From assembly GCF_030028105.1 (NCBI RefSeq), contig NC_092384.1:12860316-12900078 (forward strand): a stretch of DNA of 39,763 nucleotides. Direction: 5' to 3'. Numbering within the stretch: position 1 is the stretch's first letter; each line of letters begins with the position of its first letter. Source of the stretch: Mobula birostris (lineage: Eukaryota). Position numbers and translations under genes: made by a program. Below are positions 6,271-34,135 of this stretch, piece by piece. The notes beneath the pieces were generated by a model that saw nothing but the letters and a program-made list of their open reading frames with translations, was not told the DNA's origin and searched no databases.

Positions 6271-6299
6271 CAGCAGTCTATGTAGCCTCTAAACTGATG

Positions 6300-6722
6300 G
6301 AATGAAAATCGATATCTCCATCTTTCGCTGATCCATCCCCGTCCCTTCCTTCTTCTTCAATTGCCCACTCTAGACCCTCTGCTTATCACCTTGATCTGGT
6401 TTTCCCATGGTCTACTCTCCTCTGTTATCAAATTCCTTATTCTCCAGCCCTTTAACTTTTCCACTTACCACCTTCTTCCTTCTTACTTCATCCCCACCCC
6501 CCACCTCACCAACCCATCTGGCATCAGCTATCACCGTCTAGCCTGTACTTCTTCCTCTCCCTCACCTTCTTATGCTAACATCTTCCCCTTTCCTTTCCAG
6601 TCCCGAGGAAGGACCTCGGCCCGAACTTTTCACTGTGTATTCATTTCCACAGATGCTGCCTGTTCTGCTGATTTCCTCCAGCATTTTGGGTCTATTGCTC
6701 TGGTTTTCCAGCATCTGCAGAA
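6300..6722 (+). mobile_element. Penelope-like element (PLE) 3' end with decayed hammerhead motif
   Basis: CT-rich linker, then CAGTC-CCGAGGA-AGGACCTCGGCCC-GAAC (about 6598-6626) and GATGCTGCC...CCAGCATTTTG, homologous to 13608-13959 and to the reverse complement of 16074-16377. Confidence 0.7.
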
Positions 6723-7544
6723 TCTGTTGTACAGTACAGCACAGTACATGCCCTTCAGCCCACAATGCTGTGCCGACCCTCAAACTCTGCCTCCCATATA
6801 ACCCCCCCACCCCAGGACAAGATCTTTTAAAAAAAGAACTGCAATTAAATGTTTTATCCACAGAGTATAACGCCATAGAAATTTGAGCAGCTTGTGTACA
6901 ATCGTAGAGATCTGGTTGGTGTAGAGCACTACAAGAACATTGAAATTAATAGATGTTCTTCATTTCGTAGGATCATTTTATATATCGGTTTCTACACAAG
7001 ATGGCTCTGCAGTGCATTAGAACAGTGTTATAGTTCTAATCAGGTCTTGTTTTGAGGTGGGTCTGTGCATTTTCATGAACATGCTGGACAGGTAAAATAT
7101 CAATTTTAATGCCTTTACCTATCAGCAAGTTTTGAGAAAACCTTAAACATTACACGTTTCAAATGTCTAAAATCTATTCCTGTCTAAATATCTATTCAGA
7201 GCAATAGTCTACTTTATACAACTGCATTTTGTTTTTAGTGGGATATTTTACAAGAAGGAATTATTTACAATAAATTTCAACATGATAAACGTTGTTAAAA
7301 ATTTGGGTCTTCTAAACGCTTCAAATTTTGCTATCATTTGTGCTTCGCATAAAGGGGAAATGCAAGTGCAATGGGGAAATTACTGCATCGAACCGAAGTG
7401 GAACTTGGTTTCTCTTATAAAAAACGCTGTCAGACCTTTAGAGTATCTTCAAAACATTGCTATTACAACGATCAGAATGGCCTTTGTGCATTGGAACGAT
7501 GTATCCTGAACACGGCATGCCGATTCTGGGTCTGGTTTCTTCCA

Positions 7545-9989: not shown

Positions 9990-12923
9990 TTGGGGGGTGG
10001 GAATCAAATTAAAGAGGCTAGGCGTGAGGAGGTTAGTTCACTACAGGGGGATGGGAACCAGTGCAGAGTGGCAGAAGGGTGTAAAGTGAGGGTAGAAACA
10101 AAAAGTACTATGGAGAAAAGTAAAAGTGGCAGGCCGACAAATCCAGGGCAAGCATTAAAAAGGGCCACTTTTCAGCATAATTGTATAAGGGCTAAGAGAG
10201 TTGTAAAAGAGCGCCTGAAGGCTTTGTGTGTCAATGCAAGGAGCATTCGTAATAAGGTGGATGAATTGAAAGTGCAGATTGTTATTAATGATTATGATAT
10301 AGTTGGGATCACAGAGACATGGCTCCAGGGTGACCAGGGATGGGAGCTCAACGTTCAGGGATATTCAATATTCAGGAGGGATAGACATGAAGGAAGGGGA
10401 GGTGGGGTGGCGTTGCTGGTTAAAGAAGAGATTAACGCAATAGAAAGGAAGGACATAAGCCGGGAAGATGTGGAATCGATATGGGTAGAGCTGCGTAACA
10501 CTAAGGGGCAGAAGATGCTGGTGGGAGTTGTGTACAGGCCACCTAACAGTAATAGTGAGGTCGGAGATGGTATTAAACAGGAAATTAGAAATGTGTGCAA
10601 TAAAGGAACAGCAGTTATAATGGGTGACTTCAATCTACATGTAGATTGGGTGAACCAAATTGGTAAAGGTGCTGAGGATGAGGATTTCTTGGAATGTATG
10701 CGGGATGGTTTTTTGAACCAACATGTCGAGGAACCGACTAGAGAGCAGGCTATTCTGGACTGGGTTTTGAGCAATGAGGAAGGGTTAATTAGCAATCTTG
10801 TCGTGAGAGGCCCCTTGGGTAAGAGTGACCATAATATGGTGGAATTCTTCATTAAGATGGAGAGTGACATAGTTAATTCAGAAACAAAGGTTCTGAACTT
10901 AAAGAGGGGTAACTTTGAAGGTATGAGACGTGAATTAGCTAAGATAGACTGGCAAATGACACTTAAAGGATTGACGGTGGATATGCAATGGCAAGCATTT
11001 AAAGGTTGCATGGATGAACTGCAACAAATGTTCATCCCAGTTTGGCAAAAGAATAAATCAAGGAAGGTAGTGCACCCGTGGCTGACAAGAGAAATTAGGG
11101 ATAGTATCAATTCCAAAGAAGCAGCATACAAATTAGCCAGAGAAAGTGGCTCACCTGAGGACTGGGAGAAATTCAGAGTTCAGCAGAGGAGGACAAAGGG
11201 CTTAATTAGGAAGGGGAAAAAAGATTATGAGAGAAAACTGGCAGGCAACATAAAAACGGACTGTAAAAGCTTTTATAGGTATGTAAAAAGGAAAAGACTG
11301 GTAAAGACAAATGTAGGTCCCCTGCAGGCAGAAACAGGTGAGTTGATTATGGGGAGCAAGGACATGGCAGACCAATTGAATAATTACTTTGGTTCTGTCT
11401 TCACTAAGGAGGACATAAATAATCTTCCAGAAATAGTAGGGGACAGAGGGTCCGGTGAGATGGAGGAACTGAGCGAAATACATGTTAGTAGGGAAGTGGT
11501 GTTAGGTAAATTGAAGGGATTGAAGGCAGATAAATCCCCAGGGCCAGATGGTCTGCATCCCAGGGTGCTTAAGGAAGTAGCCCAAGAAATAGTGGATGCA
11601 TTAGTGATAATTTTTCAAAACTCGTTAGATTCTGGACTAGTTCCTGAGGATTGGAGGGTGGCTAATGTAACTCCACTTTTTAAAAAAGGAGGGAGAGAGA
11701 AACCGGGGAATTATAGACCGGTTAGCCTAACGTCGGTGGTGGGGAAACTGCTGGAGTCAGTTATCAAGGATGTGATAACAGCACATTTGGAAAGTGGTGA
11801 AATCATCGGACAAAGTCAGCATGGATTTGTGAAAGGAAAATCATGTCTGACGAATCTCATAGAATTTTTTGAGGATGTAACTAGTAGAGTGGATAGGGGA
11901 GAACCAGTGGATGTGGTATATTTGGATTTTCAGAAGGCTTTTGACAAGGTCCCACACAGGAGATTAGTGTGCAAACTTAAAGCACACGGTATTGGGGGTA
12001 AGGTATTGGTGTGGGTGGAGAGTTGGTTAGCAGACAGGAAGCAAAGAGTGGGAATAAATGGGACCTTTTCAGAATGGCAGGCAGTGACTAGTGGGGTACC
12101 GCAAGGCTCAGTGCTGGGACTCCAGTTGTTTACAATATATATTAATGACTTGGATGAGGGAATTAAATGCAGCATCTCCAAGTTTGCGGATGACACGAAG
12201 CTGGGTGGCAGTGTTAGCTGTGAGGAGGATGCTAAGAGGATGCAGGGTGACTTGGATAGGTTGGGTGAGTGGGCAAATTCATGGCAGATGCAATTTAATG
12301 TGGATAAATGTGAAGTTATCCACTTTGGTGGCAAAAATAGGAAAACAGATTATTATCTGAATGGTGGCCGATTAGGAAAAGGGGAGGTGCAACGTGACCT
12401 GGGTGTCATTATACACCAGTCATTGAAAGTGGGCATGCAGGTACAGCAGGCGGTGAAAAAGGCGAATGGTATGCTGGCATTTATAGCGAGAGGATTTGAG
12501 TACAGGAGCAGGGAGGTACTACTGCAGTTGTACAAGGCCTTGGTGAGACCGCACCTGGAGTATTGTGTGCAGTTTTGGTCCCCTAATCTGAGAAAAGACA
12601 TCCTTGCCATAGAGGGAGTACAGAGAAGGTTCACCAGATTGATTCCTGGGATGGCAGGACTTTCATATGAAGAAAGAATGGATGAACTGGGCTTGTACTC
12701 GTTGGAATTTAGAAGATTGAGGGGGGATCTGATTGAAACGTATAAGATCCTAAAGGGATTGGACAGGCTAGATGTAGGAAGATTGTTCCCAATGTTGGGG
12801 AATTCCAGAACAAGGGGTCACAGTTTGAGGATAGAGGGGAAGCCTTTTAGGACCGAGATTGTCAGGGCCCTAGCAGAGATATCTAAAACATCCTTAGTGA
12901 CAAGAGAGCTACCAGAGGATTAA
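9990..12923 (+). CDS. CR1 ORF2p: APE endonuclease plus reverse transcriptase, with a chimeric last 20 aa
   Basis: 977-aa open frame. EN motifs NARSI, GITETW, VYRPP, GDFN, LDWVL, SDH; RT motifs PGPDG, YRPVSLTS, QHGF, YLDFQKAFD, GVPQGS, FADD. First in-frame ATG is at 10110. Confidence 0.95.
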   Translation: MGGGNQIKEARREEVSSLQGDGNQCRVAEGCKVRVETKSTMEKSKSGRPTNPGQALKRATFQHNCIRAKRVVKERLKALCVNARSIRNKVDELKVQIVINDYDIVGITETWLQGDQGWELNVQGYSIFRRDRHEGRGGGVALLVKEEINAIERKDISREDVESIWVELRNTKGQKMLVGVVYRPPNSNSEVGDGIKQEIRNVCNKGTAVIMGDFNLHVDWVNQIGKGAEDEDFLECMRDGFLNQHVEEPTREQAILDWVLSNEEGLISNLVVRGPLGKSDHNMVEFFIKMESDIVNSETKVLNLKRGNFEGMRRELAKIDWQMTLKGLTVDMQWQAFKGCMDELQQMFIPVWQKNKSRKVVHPWLTREIRDSINSKEAAYKLARESGSPEDWEKFRVQQRRTKGLIRKGKKDYERKLAGNIKTDCKSFYRYVKRKRLVKTNVGPLQAETGELIMGSKDMADQLNNYFGSVFTKEDINNLPEIVGDRGSGEMEELSEIHVSREVVLGKLKGLKADKSPGPDGLHPRVLKEVAQEIVDALVIIFQNSLDSGLVPEDWRVANVTPLFKKGGREKPGNYRPVSLTSVVGKLLESVIKDVITAHLESGEIIGQSQHGFVKGKSCLTNLIEFFEDVTSRVDRGEPVDVVYLDFQKAFDKVPHRRLVCKLKAHGIGGKVLVWVESWLADRKQRVGINGTFSEWQAVTSGVPQGSVLGLQLFTIYINDLDEGIKCSISKFADDTKLGGSVSCEEDAKRMQGDLDRLGEWANSWQMQFNVDKCEVIHFGGKNRKTDYYLNGGRLGKGEVQRDLGVIIHQSLKVGMQVQQAVKKANGMLAFIARGFEYRSREVLLQLYKALVRPHLEYCVQFWSPNLRKDILAIEGVQRRFTRLIPGMAGLSYEERMDELGLYSLEFRRLRGDLIETYKILKGLDRLDVGRLFPMLGNSRTRGHSLRIEGKPFRTEIVRALAEISKTSLVTRELPED

Positions 12924-13054
12924 AGGATAGCCAATGCTGTTCCACTGTTTAAAAAAGACTCTGAACAGAATCTAAGAAATTATAGGCCTGTGAGTCTGAC
13001 ATCAATTGTGGGAAAGTTATTGGAATGTATTCTATGGGACCGGGTATATAAGTA

Positions 13055-13959
13055 ACACACACAAAATGCAGGTGGAACTCAGCAGGCCAGGCAGCATCTA
13101 TGGAAAAGTGCAAAGTCAATGTTGCGGGCCAAGACCCTTCAGCAGGACTGGAGAAAAAGAACAGGAGTAAGGGGGTGGGGAGGAGAGGGACAAACACGGG
13201 GTGATAGGTGAAACTGGGAGGTGGGGAGTGGTGAAGTAAATAGTTGTGAAGTTGATTGATGAAAGCTATACAGGGATGGAGTAGGGGGAATCTATTAGGA
13301 TTCTAATAAGAATCTAATAGCAAGAAAGAAAAAGAGAGGGGAGCACCAGAGGGAGGCAGTAGACAGGTAAGGTGAGAGAGGGAAATAATAATGGGGAATA
13401 GAGAAGAGGGGATCATCACTGGAAATTCGAGAAATTGATATTCATGCCATCAGTTTAGACGCTACCCAGGCAGAATATAAGGTGTTGCTCTTCCAACCTG
13501 AGTGCGGTTTCATTGCGACAGTAGAGGAGGCCATGGATGGACATGTCAGAATGGGAATGGGAAGTGGAATTAAAATTGGTGGGCACTGGGAGAGAAATGG
13601 GAACATGCTCAGGTTGGAGGAGCAACACTTTATATTCCATCAGGGTAGTTTACAACCTTCTATTCTTTCCTATTTGATTTCCCCTTCTCCAGCCCTGCAT
13701 CTCTTTCACCAATCAACTTCCCAACTTTTTACTTTACCCCTCCCTTCCCACAGTTTGACTTATCACCTTGTGTTGCCCTTTACCATCCCCCCACCCTCTT
13801 ATTCTGACTCCATATCTTTTTTCCTCTGTTGAAGGGTCTCGGCCTGAAATGGTGACTGTACTCTTTTCCGTAGATGTTGCCTGGCCTACCGAGTGTCTCG
13901 AGCATTTTGTGTATGTTACTTGGATTTCCAGCATCTTCAGATTTTCTCCTGTTTGTTGA
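13055..13959. mobile_element. Fold-back (inverted) PLE-derived insertion with a 10-bp TSD
   Basis: Left arm is a minus-strand PLE end including the GIY-YIG C-terminal-like peptide FNSTSHSHSDMSIHGLLYC...RLEEQHLIF; right arm 13608-13959 is the same end on the plus strand; TATATAAGTA at 13045-13054 and 13960-13969. Confidence 0.85.
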
Positions 13960-14127
13960 TATATAAGTATTCTGATAGACATGAACTGATTAAGGTTAGT
14001 CAGCATGGCTTTGTGTGTAGTAGGTCATATCAAACCAATCCTAATGAGCATTTGAAGGAAGTTACCGGGAAAGAGGATGAAGGCAAGGCAGTGGATGGTG
14101 TATACAAGGGCTTTAGTAAGGCTTTTG

Positions 14128-14431
14128 TGTTGGCGCGTGGCCAGGTGGTTAAGGTGTTCGTCTAATGATCTGAAGGTCGCTAGTTCGAGCCTTGGCTGAG
14201 GGAGCGTGCTGTGTCCTTGAGCAAGGCACTTAACCACACATTGCTCTGTGATGACACCAATGCCAAGCTGTATGGGTCCTAATGCCCTTCCCTTGGACAG
14301 CATCGGTGGCGTGGAGAGGGGGAGACTTGCAGTATGGGCAACTACTGGTCTTCCATACAACCTTGCCCAGGCCTATGCCCTACCTTCCAAAGTGCAAATC
14401 CATGGTCTCACAAGACTAATGGATGCCTATA
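14128..14431 (+). mobile_element. tRNA-derived SINE
   Basis: A box TGGCCAGGTGG 14138-14148, B box GTTCGAGCC 14183-14191, hairpin GTGTCCTTGAGCAAGGCAC from 14211; TSD TAGTAAGGCTTTTG / TAGTATGGCGTTTG (12/14) at 14114-14127 and 14432-14445. Confidence 0.85.
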
Positions 14432-16073
14432 TAGTATGGCGTTTGACAAGTTCCCACTTGTCAGGAAAGCTCAGTTGCTTGGCACTCAGGATAAGGTAGT
14501 AAATTTTCTTTGTGGGAGAAGCCAGAGAGTGGTAGTGAAGGGTTGCTTCTCTGACTGGGGCCTGTTAGTCATGGTGTGCCTCAAGGATCTCTGCTGGGTC
14601 CTTTGTTGTTTATCATCTAAATCAATAATCTAAATGATAATATGATTATCAACTTTGCAGATGATGCCAAGATTGGAGGTGTTGTGGACAGTAAGGAAGG
14701 TTATCATAGCTTGCAGAGGGATTTGCACCAACTGGAAAAATACACTGAAAAATGACAGATGGAATTTAATGCAGACAAGAGTGAGGTTTTGAACTTTGGT
14801 AGGACCAACCAGGGAAGGTCTTACACAGTGAACGGTAGGGCTCTGAGGAGTGTGGCAGAACAAAGGGATCTGGGAATACAGGTTAATATTTTGTTGAAAG
14901 TGGTGTCACAGCTACATAAGGTTGTAAAGAAAGCTTTCGGCACATTGGCCTTCATAAATCAATGTATTTGGTATTGGAGATGGGAGGCTGTGTTGAAGTA
15001 GTTTTAGATATTGCTGAGGCCTAATTTGGAGTACTGTGTGCAGCTTTGGACACCTACCTACAGGAAAGATGTAAACACGGCTGAAGGAGTACAGAAAAAT
15101 TCACAAGGATATTCAGGTCCTGGAGGACCTGAGTTGTAAGGAAAGATTGAATAGGGCTAGGATTGCATTCCTTGCAACATAGAAACTTGAGGGGAGATAT
15201 GATAGAGGTATACAAAATTATGAGGGGTATAGATAGGGTCATTGCAAGCAAGCTTTTCACTGAGGTTGGGTGGGACTACAACCAGAGGTCATGGGTTGAG
15301 GGGGAAAGGTGAAAAGTTTAAGGGGAACATGAGGAGAAACTTCTTCAGTCAGAGGGTAACAAGAGTGTGGATTGGGCTGCTGACACAAGTGGTGCATGGG
15401 AGCTTGACTTCAATGTTTAAGAGATGTTTGGATAGGTACATGGATAGTAGGGATATGGAGGGTTATGGTCCTGGTGCAGGTCAGTGGTAGTAGGCAGCTT
15501 AAATTCTTTAAGCAGGTACTATATGGGTCAAAGGGCCTCTTTCTCTGTTGTACTTCTCTAAGACTCTTTGAACTTGTGTGCATTTTTACGGTTATCACCC
15601 ATGTCTATCAAGGCCAGCATTTATTGCACATGTCTAGTTATCCCAATAATGTGTTGTTGTGCCTTTGTAAACTGTCAGAATTTATTACAATAACTGTTAG
15701 AACTGTATAGCTACATAAATCACTTATCAAAGACTATTGAGAGTGAAACATGATGGTGTGGAGCTGGAGACATGAATTAGTTATTTCCATACAAGGCCAG
15801 TTACTTTTGGTATTTAAAAAACTACAACTGATTTAAGGTCAGCTGCACTGGTGTTGGAGATTTTTCCCCTGTTGGCAATTACCTATTAGATGTGAACATC
15901 ACTAGGGAAGTGCTGCTAGTGGGTGGACAGGGATATTAACAATACCAAGTTGAAGATATTTAGCTATTTTCTTTATTCAAAATAGATGCCATAAATGACT
16001 GTAGTTCTCCAGACTGGAATGTATCAATACATTGTTCTACCAATTTCAGACAAGAGACCAACACATCTTTTAA

Positions 16074-16377
16074 GCAACACACATCAAAGTTGCTGGTGAA
16101 CGCAGCAGGCCAGGCAGCATCTCTAGGAAGAGGTACAGTCGACGTTTCAGGCCGAGCCCCTTCGTCAGGACTAACTGAAGGAAGAGTTAGTAAGAGATTT
16201 GAAAGTGGGAGGGGGAGGGGAGACCCAAAATGATAGGAGAAGACAGGAGTGGGAGGGATGGAGCCAAGAGCTGGACAGGTGATTGGCAAAGGGGATATGA
16301 GAGGATCATGGGACAGGAGGTCTGGGGAGAAAGACAAGGGGTGGGGGGGGAACCAGAGGATGGGCAAGGGGTATAGT
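16074..16377 (-). mobile_element. 304-bp non-coding PLE-end insertion with a perfect 12-bp TSD
   Basis: CACATCTTTTAA at 16062-16073 and 16378-16389; internal sequence homologous to the other PLE ends. Confidence 0.9.
16137..16172 (-). ncRNA. Minimal type I hammerhead ribozyme with intact core
   Basis: Minus strand AGTC-CUGACGA-AGG(GGCUCGG)CCU-GAAA-C-GUC/GACU: stem I AGUC:GACU, stem II AGG:CCU, loopless ACGU stem III; predicted cut between 16141 and 16140. Confidence 0.8.
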
Positions 16378-16799
16378 CACATCTTTTAATTTTATTTTAG
16401 TACATTCTTCAAAATATGAAAACATGGTCTCATTTCTCTGCACATCATTACTTAGGTACGTTTCTTTGCCATTCATATTGGCTTAAAGGAAATAACCAAC
16501 AAGTGAAACATTGTGACATAATGTGAAATATTCCCCTGTGAAATGTGTCAGTTTCTTAAGGAAAGGAGGAAAAGATTGACAGGTGTGGGATTTTGAACTG
16601 GGAGATACATTCATTAACTGCATTTCGAGGCAAACAACATATTGAAAGTTTTACTTAATACAGTGAATACTTCATGTTACTGTTTAGTTATTGCTTTTGG
16701 TCTTAGTTTAAAAGGCCAAATTGAAACCAATCATACATATTTAGTTGGGAATATCAAACCAGTGTATATAACCACTGTAATTGGTGCTGGTCAGATGTT

Positions 16800-33599: not shown

Positions 33600-34135
33600 G
33601 TAGTAGGGTTCTGTCCCACAAGGAATCCTCGGTGTCCTCCTGGTGCATGAACTGCAAAAGGCTAGTATGCAGTTAGAGAAAGTAATTAGTAGATCTAATT
33701 AGAATGTTGCATTTTATTACTGGAGAAACTAAATACAGAAATAAACACAAGAGGTTCTACAGATGTTCGAAATCAAGAGTAACACTCAAAATACTATAAA
33801 ACTCGACAGGTCAGGGAGCATTCATGGAGAAGAATAAAGAGCTGATATTTCAGGCCGAGACATCGACTCTTTATTCCTCTCCATAGATGCTGCTTGAACT
33901 GCTGTGTTACTCCAGCAGTATGTGTGTAGATACAAAAATAGGAAGATTTTTCTCAGTTTAGAGTAGAACATTGTTTGGGAGGACTGGGTACAGTACTGGC
34001 TGAATTATGAGGAAGGGTTGGACAGACTGGCTTGTATCTGCTAGAGTTCTCCTGAATGAGAAAGGACCTGATAAATAAATATAAGATCTTGAGAGGTCTT
34101 GACAGGATGGAAGTTGAAAGGATCTAGAATTAGAT
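33600..34135 (+). mobile_element. Decayed CR1 C-terminal fragment, host of the 184-bp fold-back
   Basis: Reads through as ...GETKYRN|RKIF... after removing 33744-33940; later blocks resemble CR1 'YEERLDRLGL' and 'YKILRGLDR'. Confidence 0.55.
33744..33927. mobile_element. 184-bp fold-back mini-element built from two PLE termini
   Basis: Arms GGAGAAGAATAAAGAG and CTCTTTATTCCTCTCC (15/16 complementary) flank a residual TTCAGGCCGAGAC; TSD AAATACAGAAATA / AGATACAAAAATA (11/13) at 33731-33743 and 33928-33940. Confidence 0.7.

What the first reader, a model, noticed from the sequence alone, without database searches (positions are those of the whole stretch)
13045..13969. 905-bp fold-back Penelope insertion with a perfect 10-bp TSD and hammerhead remnants at both ends
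Two PLE 3' ends lie head-to-head (arms 13055-13502 and 13608-13959, about 105-nt spacer) and were inserted as one unit: TATATAAGTA is duplicated and the host CR1 frame continues across it. Each arm has a mutated hammerhead (minus about 13113-13150, core CUGCUGA/GCAA; plus about 13826-13858, core CUGUUGA). Inverted terminal duplications are known for Drosophila Penelope. Here the unit is short, non-autonomous and would transcribe as a long hairpin from either strand, a possible siRNA or ADAR substrate.
Basis: partly seen in the sequence, partly recalled or inferred. Interest (0 to 1): 0.7.

Follow-up and report, generated by a model that had tools for sequence, protein, structure and literature searches.

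The report
Ordinary head-to-head Penelope retrotransposon insertion
This 905-bp palindrome-like block is one old, dead insertion of a Penelope-like retrotransposon laid down as two shortened copies facing each other, which is the published, usual way these elements insert, so it is real but ordinary.

Summary
Two inverted arms are flanked by an exact TATATAAGTA repeat. Removing the block plus one repeat copy restores a gap-free CR1 reverse-transcriptase frame. The arms are 3' ends of a canonical Penelope-like element (PLE). The left arm runs into the C-terminus of the GIY-YIG endonuclease ORF, whose relatives carry RT plus GIY-YIG. Both hammerhead cores are mutated.

Two corrections:
- The "105-nt spacer" is not a spacer. 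It is the left arm continuing into the ORF, so the arms abut at about 13594-13607.
- The right arm carries a 38-nt extension that the left arm lacks. This is the known PLE "tail".

An inverted 5'-truncated copy, one TSD, a 30-40-bp tail at one end and an AT-rich target are the published typical PLE insertion (PMC8557442, PMC3846280). A PLE protein has been shown to cleave and extend both strands from two RT start sites a tail apart (PMC11167929).

Paralogues do not share this inversion point. A second stub in the window (33731-33940) inverts elsewhere. So it was made at insertion and is not a mobile unit. The hairpin is decayed (79% arm identity, longest perfect duplex 11 bp), and no RNA data bear on it. 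The scan has noted the same structure many times elsewhere in this genome. Interest is low.

The parts
13045..13054 (.). Left copy of the target-site duplication TATATAAGTA. Its last 5 bases (AAGTA) could equally be templated by the element (TACTT).
   Evidence: Exact direct repeat D14; excision test; right arm reads GTTACTTGG at the homologous place.
13055..13593 (-). Left arm: a 5'-truncated PLE copy in minus orientation. It ends outward at the tail-less terminus (...CATTTTGTGTGTGT).
   Evidence: Alignment to the right arm and to three other PLE 3' ends in the window. Paralogous contigs match up to 13576 or 13593 and then run on into ORF sequence (loose ends).
13419..13593 (-). Remnant of the C-terminus of the PLE GIY-YIG endonuclease ORF (ISLPVPTNFNSTSHSHSDMSIHGLLYCRNETALRLEEQHLIF...NFSNFQ). 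Premature stop at 13455-13457, natural stop at 13416-13418.
   Evidence: Translation. phmmer found 49 relatives at E<=1e-3, best 1.5e-15, mostly matching near their C-terminal ends. P0008 has RVT_1 plus a weak GIY-YIG hit just upstream of the match and shows the LIY...YIGET motif.
13113..13150 (-). Inactivated minimal hammerhead of the left arm (CUGCUGA, GCAAC, AUU).
   Evidence: Motif comparison with the intact copy at 16168-16141. Paralogues read T at 13124, which restores GAAAC (table 3).
13594..13607 (.). Inner junction: 14 nt of uncertain origin, either filler or a decayed 5' extension of the right arm (6 of 14 match the family sequence upstream of LRLEEQ).
   Evidence: Family continuation seen in loose ends at 13519 and 13593, compared with the window sequence.
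13608..13959 (+). Right arm: a 5'-truncated PLE copy in plus orientation. It starts in the same ORF at LRLEEQHFIF..GSLQP (13608-13663) and lacks about 130 nt present in the left arm (about 13316-13447).
   Evidence: Translation; inverted repeat I3; alignments.
13826..13858 (+). Inactivated hammerhead of the right arm (CUGUUGA, GAAAU, GGU). The helix I 5' strand is deleted.
13922..13959 (+). 38-nt PLE 'tail', present on this arm only. The family's long 3' terminus lies here.
   Evidence: No partner in the left arm. Homologous tails occur in the copies at about 6700-6735 and 33744-33783. Hundreds of paralogous contigs lose all consensus just after 13954-13956 (loose ends). Published 30-40-bp tail at one end (PMC8557442, PMC3846280, PMC11167929).
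13960..13969 (.). Right copy of the TSD.
12861..14129 (+). Host: an old, decayed CR1-type RT fragment interrupted by the insertion. It is colinear with aa 534-651 of the intact CR1 ORF2 at 9990-12923.

Best explanation
This is one integration event of a canonical (C-terminal GIY-YIG) Penelope-like retroelement into an AT-rich site (TATATAAGTA) inside an old CR1 copy. It left two 5'-truncated copies head to head, with their 3' ends pointing outward.

Most likely mechanism (inferred):
- The element's endonuclease cut both strands about 10 bp apart.
- Each freed 3'-OH primed reverse transcription of PLE RNA.
- The bottom strand started at the distal RT start site, giving the right arm with the 38-nt tail.
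- The top strand (...AAGTA-3') started at the proximal site just past the GU run, giving the tail-less left arm. A 5-nt match to UACUU may have helped.
- Both cDNAs stopped within the last roughly 350-540 nt of the element and were joined in the middle.
- Fill-in produced the TSD.

The product was dead on arrival because it has no RT. It has since decayed by roughly 10-12% per arm, and both hammerheads were lost. It has no demonstrated function.

Shown: the anatomy, the single TSD, the PLE identity, and the inversion point not being shared with paralogues. Inferred: priming on both strands and the use of two start sites.
For: One TSD around the composite, and exact restoration of the CR1 frame on excision. 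Neither arm has a private TSD.

PLE identity: the ORF remnant matches C-termini of proteins with RVT_1 plus GIY-YIG, and a hammerhead motif lies in the 3' region.

Each arm holds element sequence that the other lacks: ORF piece 13503-13593 in the left arm, tail 13922-13959 in the right. As they stand, neither is a copy of the other.

In the variable 3'-UTR the arms resemble each other far more (80% over 134 nt, score 69) than either resembles other copies (66-70%, scores 20-26). This points to one source subfamily. In the conserved end, the substitutions listed against the paralogue majority are private to one arm (table 3). This fits decay after insertion.

Both outer ends coincide with family-wide termini (loose ends at 13054 and 13954-13956). 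The tail-less terminus recurs in the simple stub at 16062-16389, and both termini recur in the second fold-back at 33731-33940, which also has a tail on one arm only.

Literature:
- An inverted 5'-truncated copy plus a 30-40-bp tail at one end is typical of PLEs (PMC8557442).
- A 9-10-bp TSD around inverted pLTRs with a 31-bp tail has been described (PMC3846280).
- A purified PLE protein cleaves and extends both strands, prefers AT-rich DNA, and starts RT at two sites whose spacing equals the tail (PMC11167929).
Against: The arms are only 79% identical, yet the 10-bp TSD is perfect. If the arms were identical at insertion, the chance that a 10-bp pair stays intact is about 0.1, which is low but not excluding.

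The published in vitro work saw no difference in start site between strands and no need for homology. So the one-start-site-per-strand picture and the 5-nt microhomology are my inference.

The second stub has a nearly symmetric centre (5 nt between the arms). That fits the rival self-priming (snap-back) model, and a later deletion at a palindrome centre could have made the present locus asymmetric.

No contig spanning either junction was recovered from another species. Orthology is shown only for part of the left arm (organism B, 338 nt, 5 differences).
Confidence: 0.87

Rival explanations
1. Same single PLE event, but the inverted arm arose by self-priming: one cDNA (or an antisense template) folded back and copied itself. 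A later deletion near the palindrome centre produced today's asymmetry of about 90 nt.
For: Arkhipova et al. proposed self-priming from palindromes at PLE inversion junctions (PMC3846280). The second stub in the window is almost symmetric, with 5 nt between the arms. Long palindromes are prone to central deletion (general knowledge).
Against: Each arm has sequence the other lacks, including the tail, which lies at the outer end rather than the centre. The tail-less end coincides with an independent family terminus, which snap-back does not predict. A PLE protein has been shown to extend both strands directly (PMC11167929).
Confidence: 0.2
2. A mobile, non-autonomous fold-back unit: the 905-bp hairpin is a copy of a master fold-back that PLE proteins mobilise in trans.
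For: Both arms are already 21% apart while the TSD is perfect, which could mean an old, diverged master was copied recently. PLE pLTRs can mobilise foreign inserts in trans (PMC3846280).
Against: Paralogous contigs that cover 13519-13593 leave the locus at 13576 or 13593 and continue with PLE ORF sequence, not with an inverted arm. Fold-back joints seen in the same runs lie at many other coordinates, for example 13107>13904 and 13158>13903. blastn of the unit against the window finds only short terminal matches at three other loci. The host CR1 is itself heavily decayed, so an old insertion suffices.
Confidence: 0.04
3. Two separate PLE insertions that happen to abut.
For: The family is extremely abundant: about 10^5 contigs per run were laid on the 2-kb stretch. 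Nested or adjacent hits are therefore common.
Against: The second insertion would have had to land exactly between the first copy's 5' end and its TSD while leaving no TSD of its own. Only one duplication exists, and it brackets the composite. The arms share a rare UTR subfamily. The same topology recurs at 33731-33940.
Confidence: 0.03

Closest known systems
Canonical endonuclease-bearing Penelope-like elements (Penelope/Poseidon, Neptune): the typical insertion architecture
   Same: An inverted 5'-truncated copy abuts the 5' end, one short TSD surrounds the whole, a 30-40-bp tail sits at one end only, a hammerhead motif lies in the terminal repeat region, the target is AT-rich, and the ORF ends in GIY-YIG (PMC8557442, PMC3846280, PMC4209133, PMC11167929).
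   Different: Both copies are truncated to under 550 nt. There is no full ORF and no direct pLTR, only the two stubs. This is a matter of degree, not of kind.
L1 twin priming (inversion/5'-truncation insertions; Ostertag and Kazazian 2001, cited from my own knowledge)
   Same: The second nicked strand is used as a primer on the element RNA. It gives an inverted segment inside one TSD, and microhomology is possible at the priming site.
   Different: Twin priming inverts an upstream segment with little or no duplication. Here both arms copy the same 300-450 nt of the 3' end, so both primers started near the 3' end.
Animal retrozymes / hammerhead-bearing non-autonomous PLE derivatives
   Same: They derive from the same PLE terminal region, which carries a minimal type I hammerhead (PMC7229834; bioRxiv 10.64898/2026.07.22.740005).
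   Different: Retrozymes are tandem or direct repeats with active ribozymes and circular RNA. This locus is inverted, single-copy and has two dead ribozymes.

Membership tests
Penelope-like element (C-terminal EN+) | ORF ending in a GIY-YIG endonuclease downstream of a PLE-type RT | tested here: met
   Only the last roughly 58 codons survive in the left arm. Its relatives include P0008 with RVT_1 (E 5.6e-19), followed by LIY..YIGET and then the matched stretch (62% identity). The Pfam GIY-YIG hits are below the curated cut-off (E 0.001-0.008), and the RT itself is absent from this truncated insertion.
Penelope-like element (C-terminal EN+) | Minimal type I hammerhead in the terminal repeat region | tested here: met
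   The motif is present in both arms but has core mutations. An intact version lies in the sibling copy at 16168-16141. Rfam models detect none of them, not even the intact one, so the Rfam negative is uninformative.
Penelope-like element (C-terminal EN+) | Inverted 5'-truncated copy adjacent to the 5' end, with one TSD around the whole | tested here: met
Penelope-like element (C-terminal EN+) | Optional 30-40-bp tail at one end only | tested here: met
   The 38 nt at 13922-13959 are on the right arm only. The same one-sided tail occurs at 33731-33940.
Penelope-like element (C-terminal EN+) | AT-rich target | tested here: met
   TATATAAGTA is 9 of 10 A/T. The preference is reported in PMC11167929 and PMC3846280.
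Mobile non-autonomous fold-back unit (MITE-like or retrozyme-like) | Several copies with the same ends and the same inner junction at different sites | tested here: not met
   Paralogues diverge from the locus at 13576 or 13593 into ORF sequence, and other fold-back joints lie elsewhere. There is no second copy in the window. The test is partial: short contigs only, with most rows not shown.
Mobile non-autonomous fold-back unit (MITE-like or retrozyme-like) | Active self-cleaving ribozyme | tested here: not met
   The essential A6 of CUGAUGA is changed in both arms, and GAAA is changed to GCAA in the left arm.
L1-type twin priming product | The inverted segment is the template region upstream of the direct segment, without large duplication | tested here: not met
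   The arms duplicate the same 3'-terminal 300-450 nt.
dsRNA / small-RNA source locus | Transcription through both arms, with small RNAs or A-to-I edits mapping to them | not testable with these tools
   No listed run is on record as RNA. The guessed RNA run X18 is flagged as probably DNA, and contigs cannot show strand or level.

The most novel reading that the evidence does not exclude
In head-to-head PLE insertions the two published RT start sites may be used one per strand by a single dimeric integration complex. One arm would then always carry the tail and the other would not. Both fold-backs in this window show that pattern. If it held genome-wide, it would be in vivo evidence for an asymmetric two-strand priming complex. 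The in vitro work reports no start-site difference between the two strands, which does not support this idea.
Probability: 0.25. Interest if true: 0.35.

Novelty: already known. Interest (0 to 1): 0.1.

Why it matters
It matters mainly for annotation. Short palindromic, TSD-flanked, hammerhead-bearing blocks in cartilaginous-fish genomes should be masked as ordinary Penelope-like insertion products. They should not be read as new hairpin elements, MITEs or retrozymes. The locus also agrees with the published picture of PLE integration: both strands primed, two RT start sites a tail apart, and an AT-rich target. It adds nothing to that picture that is not already in print.

Tried and rejected
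- Rfam (gathering threshold on the whole window; E<=10 on 12900-14100 and on 16000-16460) found no hammerhead, not even in the intact sibling copy. I rejected it as a test and used an explicit motif scan instead.
- Pfam on the 50-aa ORF remnant found nothing, so I used the exhaustive phmmer search.
- I first feared a conflict between an intact 977-aa CR1 ORF2 next door (a young host) and arms that are 21% diverged. This is resolved: the intact ORF belongs to a different, younger CR1 that ends at about 12860. The actual host is an old, decayed CR1 fragment.
- The many 'opposite strands' joints 13510-13543 > 13608 are not shared inversion points. They are ordinary PLE copies whose LRLEEQ segment aligns better to the right arm than to the left.
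- Read laying at 85% likeness was swamped by paralogues. No contig bridging either outer junction or the inner junction in another species was listed, so the 'one arm alone in another genome' test could not be completed.
- ARAGORN found no tRNA in the high-copy repeat at about 14127-14440 that I had taken for a tRNA-derived SINE.
Family letters quoted come only from tool output.

Full report
**Observation.** The sequence at 13045-13969 is as described.

- The repeat finder reports three collinear inverted segments: 96 nt at 79%, 77 nt at 83% and 41 nt at 85%. It also reports the exact direct repeat TATATAAGTA at 13045-13054 and 13960-13969.
- A gapped alignment of the two arms gives 228/289 identical positions, K2P 0.25 and 13 gap openings.
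- The 905 nt fold in silico into a single long hairpin, with z = -13.8 against shuffles. The longest perfectly complementary run is only 11 nt.
- A 10-mer repeat alone is weak evidence, because three exact 10-mer pairs occur in the same 2 kb. This pair, however, brackets the inverted repeat exactly.
- The excision test is decisive. Removing 13055-13969 (the unit plus one repeat copy) gives an ungapped 118-aa alignment to aa 534-651 of the intact CR1 ORF2 next door. Keeping both repeat copies or neither breaks the frame.

**What the arms are.** It reads ...ISLPVPTNFNSTSHSHSDMSIHGLLYCRNETALRLEEQHLIF..., then a premature stop, then ...DGMNINFSNFQ and the natural stop. The right arm starts in the same ORF at LRLEEQHFIF.

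- Pfam does not recognise the 50-aa piece.
- An exhaustive phmmer search finds 49 relatives (best E 1.5e-15), mostly matching near their C-terminal ends.
- One relative, P0008, has RVT_1 (E 5.6e-19), then LIY...YIGET..R..E, then the matched stretch at 62% identity.
- P0004 and P0046 have weak GIY-YIG hits directly upstream of the match.
- Other long hits are host gene models with a captured fragment.

The arms are therefore 5'-truncated copies of a canonical, C-terminal-endonuclease Penelope-like element. Each holds the ORF end plus the 3' region.

**Hammerheads.** An explicit scan for CUGANGA / helix II / GAAA / NUH finds one PLE-type motif in the window, at 16168-16141. It has a 3-bp helix II and a 5-bp helix I.

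- The left arm reads CUGCUGA ... GCAAC AUU.
- The right arm reads CUGUUGA ... GAAAU GGU and has lost the upstream helix I strand.
- Rfam finds none of these, including the intact one.

**Corrected anatomy.** The left arm is 13055-13593 on the minus strand. Paralogous contigs match up to 13576 or 13593 and then continue with PLE ORF sequence (loose ends).

- 13594-13607 is a 14-nt junction of uncertain origin.
- The right arm is 13608-13959 on the plus strand. It lacks about 130 nt that the left arm has (about 13316-13447).
- The right arm carries 38 nt at its outer end (13922-13959) that the left arm lacks.
- The left arm ends at ...CATTTTGTGTGTGT. The next five bases, formally part of the TSD, equal the element's next five bases (TACTT). 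The duplication is therefore 5-10 bp, and microhomology at that junction is possible.

**Comparison within the window and genome.** Three other PLE 3' ends lie in the window.

- 16062-16389 is a simple stub with an exact 12-bp TSD. It ends at the same tail-less terminus as the left arm.
- 6282-6735 carries the tail.
- 33731-33940 is a second head-to-head stub. Its arms are 33800-33851 and 33857-33908, its TSD is ATACA[G/A]AAATA, its inversion point lies inside the hammerhead, and the tail is on one arm only.
- In the variable UTR, the two arms of the present locus resemble each other much more than either resembles the other copies. In the conserved end they are no closer to each other than to the other copies. 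This fits one source subfamily followed by independent decay.

**Reads.** Laying contigs of three organisms showed the following.

- The family is enormously abundant in all three.
- Hundreds of paralogous contigs end without consensus just after 13954-13956, which is the long terminus of the family.
- Fold-back joints with other coordinates exist elsewhere, for example 13107>13904 and 13158>13903.
- A 338-nt contig of organism B covers 13129-13466 with 5 differences, so the insertion predates that split.
- No junction-spanning contig from another species was listed.
- No listed run is on record as RNA. The one guessed RNA run that was laid, X18, is flagged as probably DNA.

**Literature.**

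- Craig et al. [quoted passage not shown] They add that a 30-40-bp tail is often present at only one end.
- Arkhipova et al. 2013 (PMC3846280) describe inserts bounded by inverted pLTRs with 9-10-bp TSDs and a 31-bp tail on one of them. They propose self-priming, and they report small-RNA profiles that switch polarity across inverted halves.
- Frangieh et al. 2024 (PMC11167929) show that a purified PLE protein cleaves and extends both DNA strands and prefers AT-rich DNA. It starts reverse transcription at two internal sites whose spacing corresponds to the tail.
- Cervera and de la Peña 2014 (PMC4209133) established hammerheads in PLEs.

Every feature of this locus is covered by these papers.

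**Mechanism.** I commit to one integration event in which both nicked strands primed cDNA synthesis. The distal start site gave the tailed right arm and the proximal one gave the left arm. The two short cDNAs were then joined.

- Shown: the single TSD, the PLE identity, the termini, and an inversion point that paralogues do not share.
- Inferred: the priming steps.
- The main rival within the same family is snap-back self-priming followed by a central deletion.
- Separate insertions and a mobile fold-back unit are unlikely.

**Verdict.** This is a real, correctly spotted structure. It is the ordinary, published product of Penelope-like integration, and it is old and inert. Earlier notes of this scan reached the same reading for other loci of this genome. 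I checked the reading independently here.

Noticed in passing
window 9990-12923 and about 12860: A CR1 with an intact 977-aa ORF2 (endonuclease plus RT) stops matching its own family at about 12860. Paralogues continue there with ...RKNFFTQRVV. The window instead runs straight into an older, 5'-truncated CR1 RT in the same orientation. A 3'-truncated young LINE fused to an old one suggests deletion or recombination between copies, or a template switch.
   Followed up: partly
window 33731-33940: A second head-to-head PLE stub. It has 52-nt arms only 5 nt apart, an 11-bp TSD with one mismatch, an inversion point inside the hammerhead, and the tail on the minus arm only.
   Followed up: partly
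window 16062-16389: A simple tail-less PLE 3' stub with an exact 12-bp TSD. It carries the only PLE-type hammerhead motif with an intact core in the window (16168-16141, minus strand). Rfam does not detect it.
   Followed up: partly
window 13293-13322: A small local palindrome (CTATTAGGATTCT / AGAATCTAATAG) lies inside the left arm and is absent from the right arm.
   Followed up: no
window about 14127-14440: A very high-copy repeat interrupts the old CR1 just downstream of the insertion. It looks tRNA-derived by eye, but ARAGORN finds no tRNA there.
   Followed up: partly
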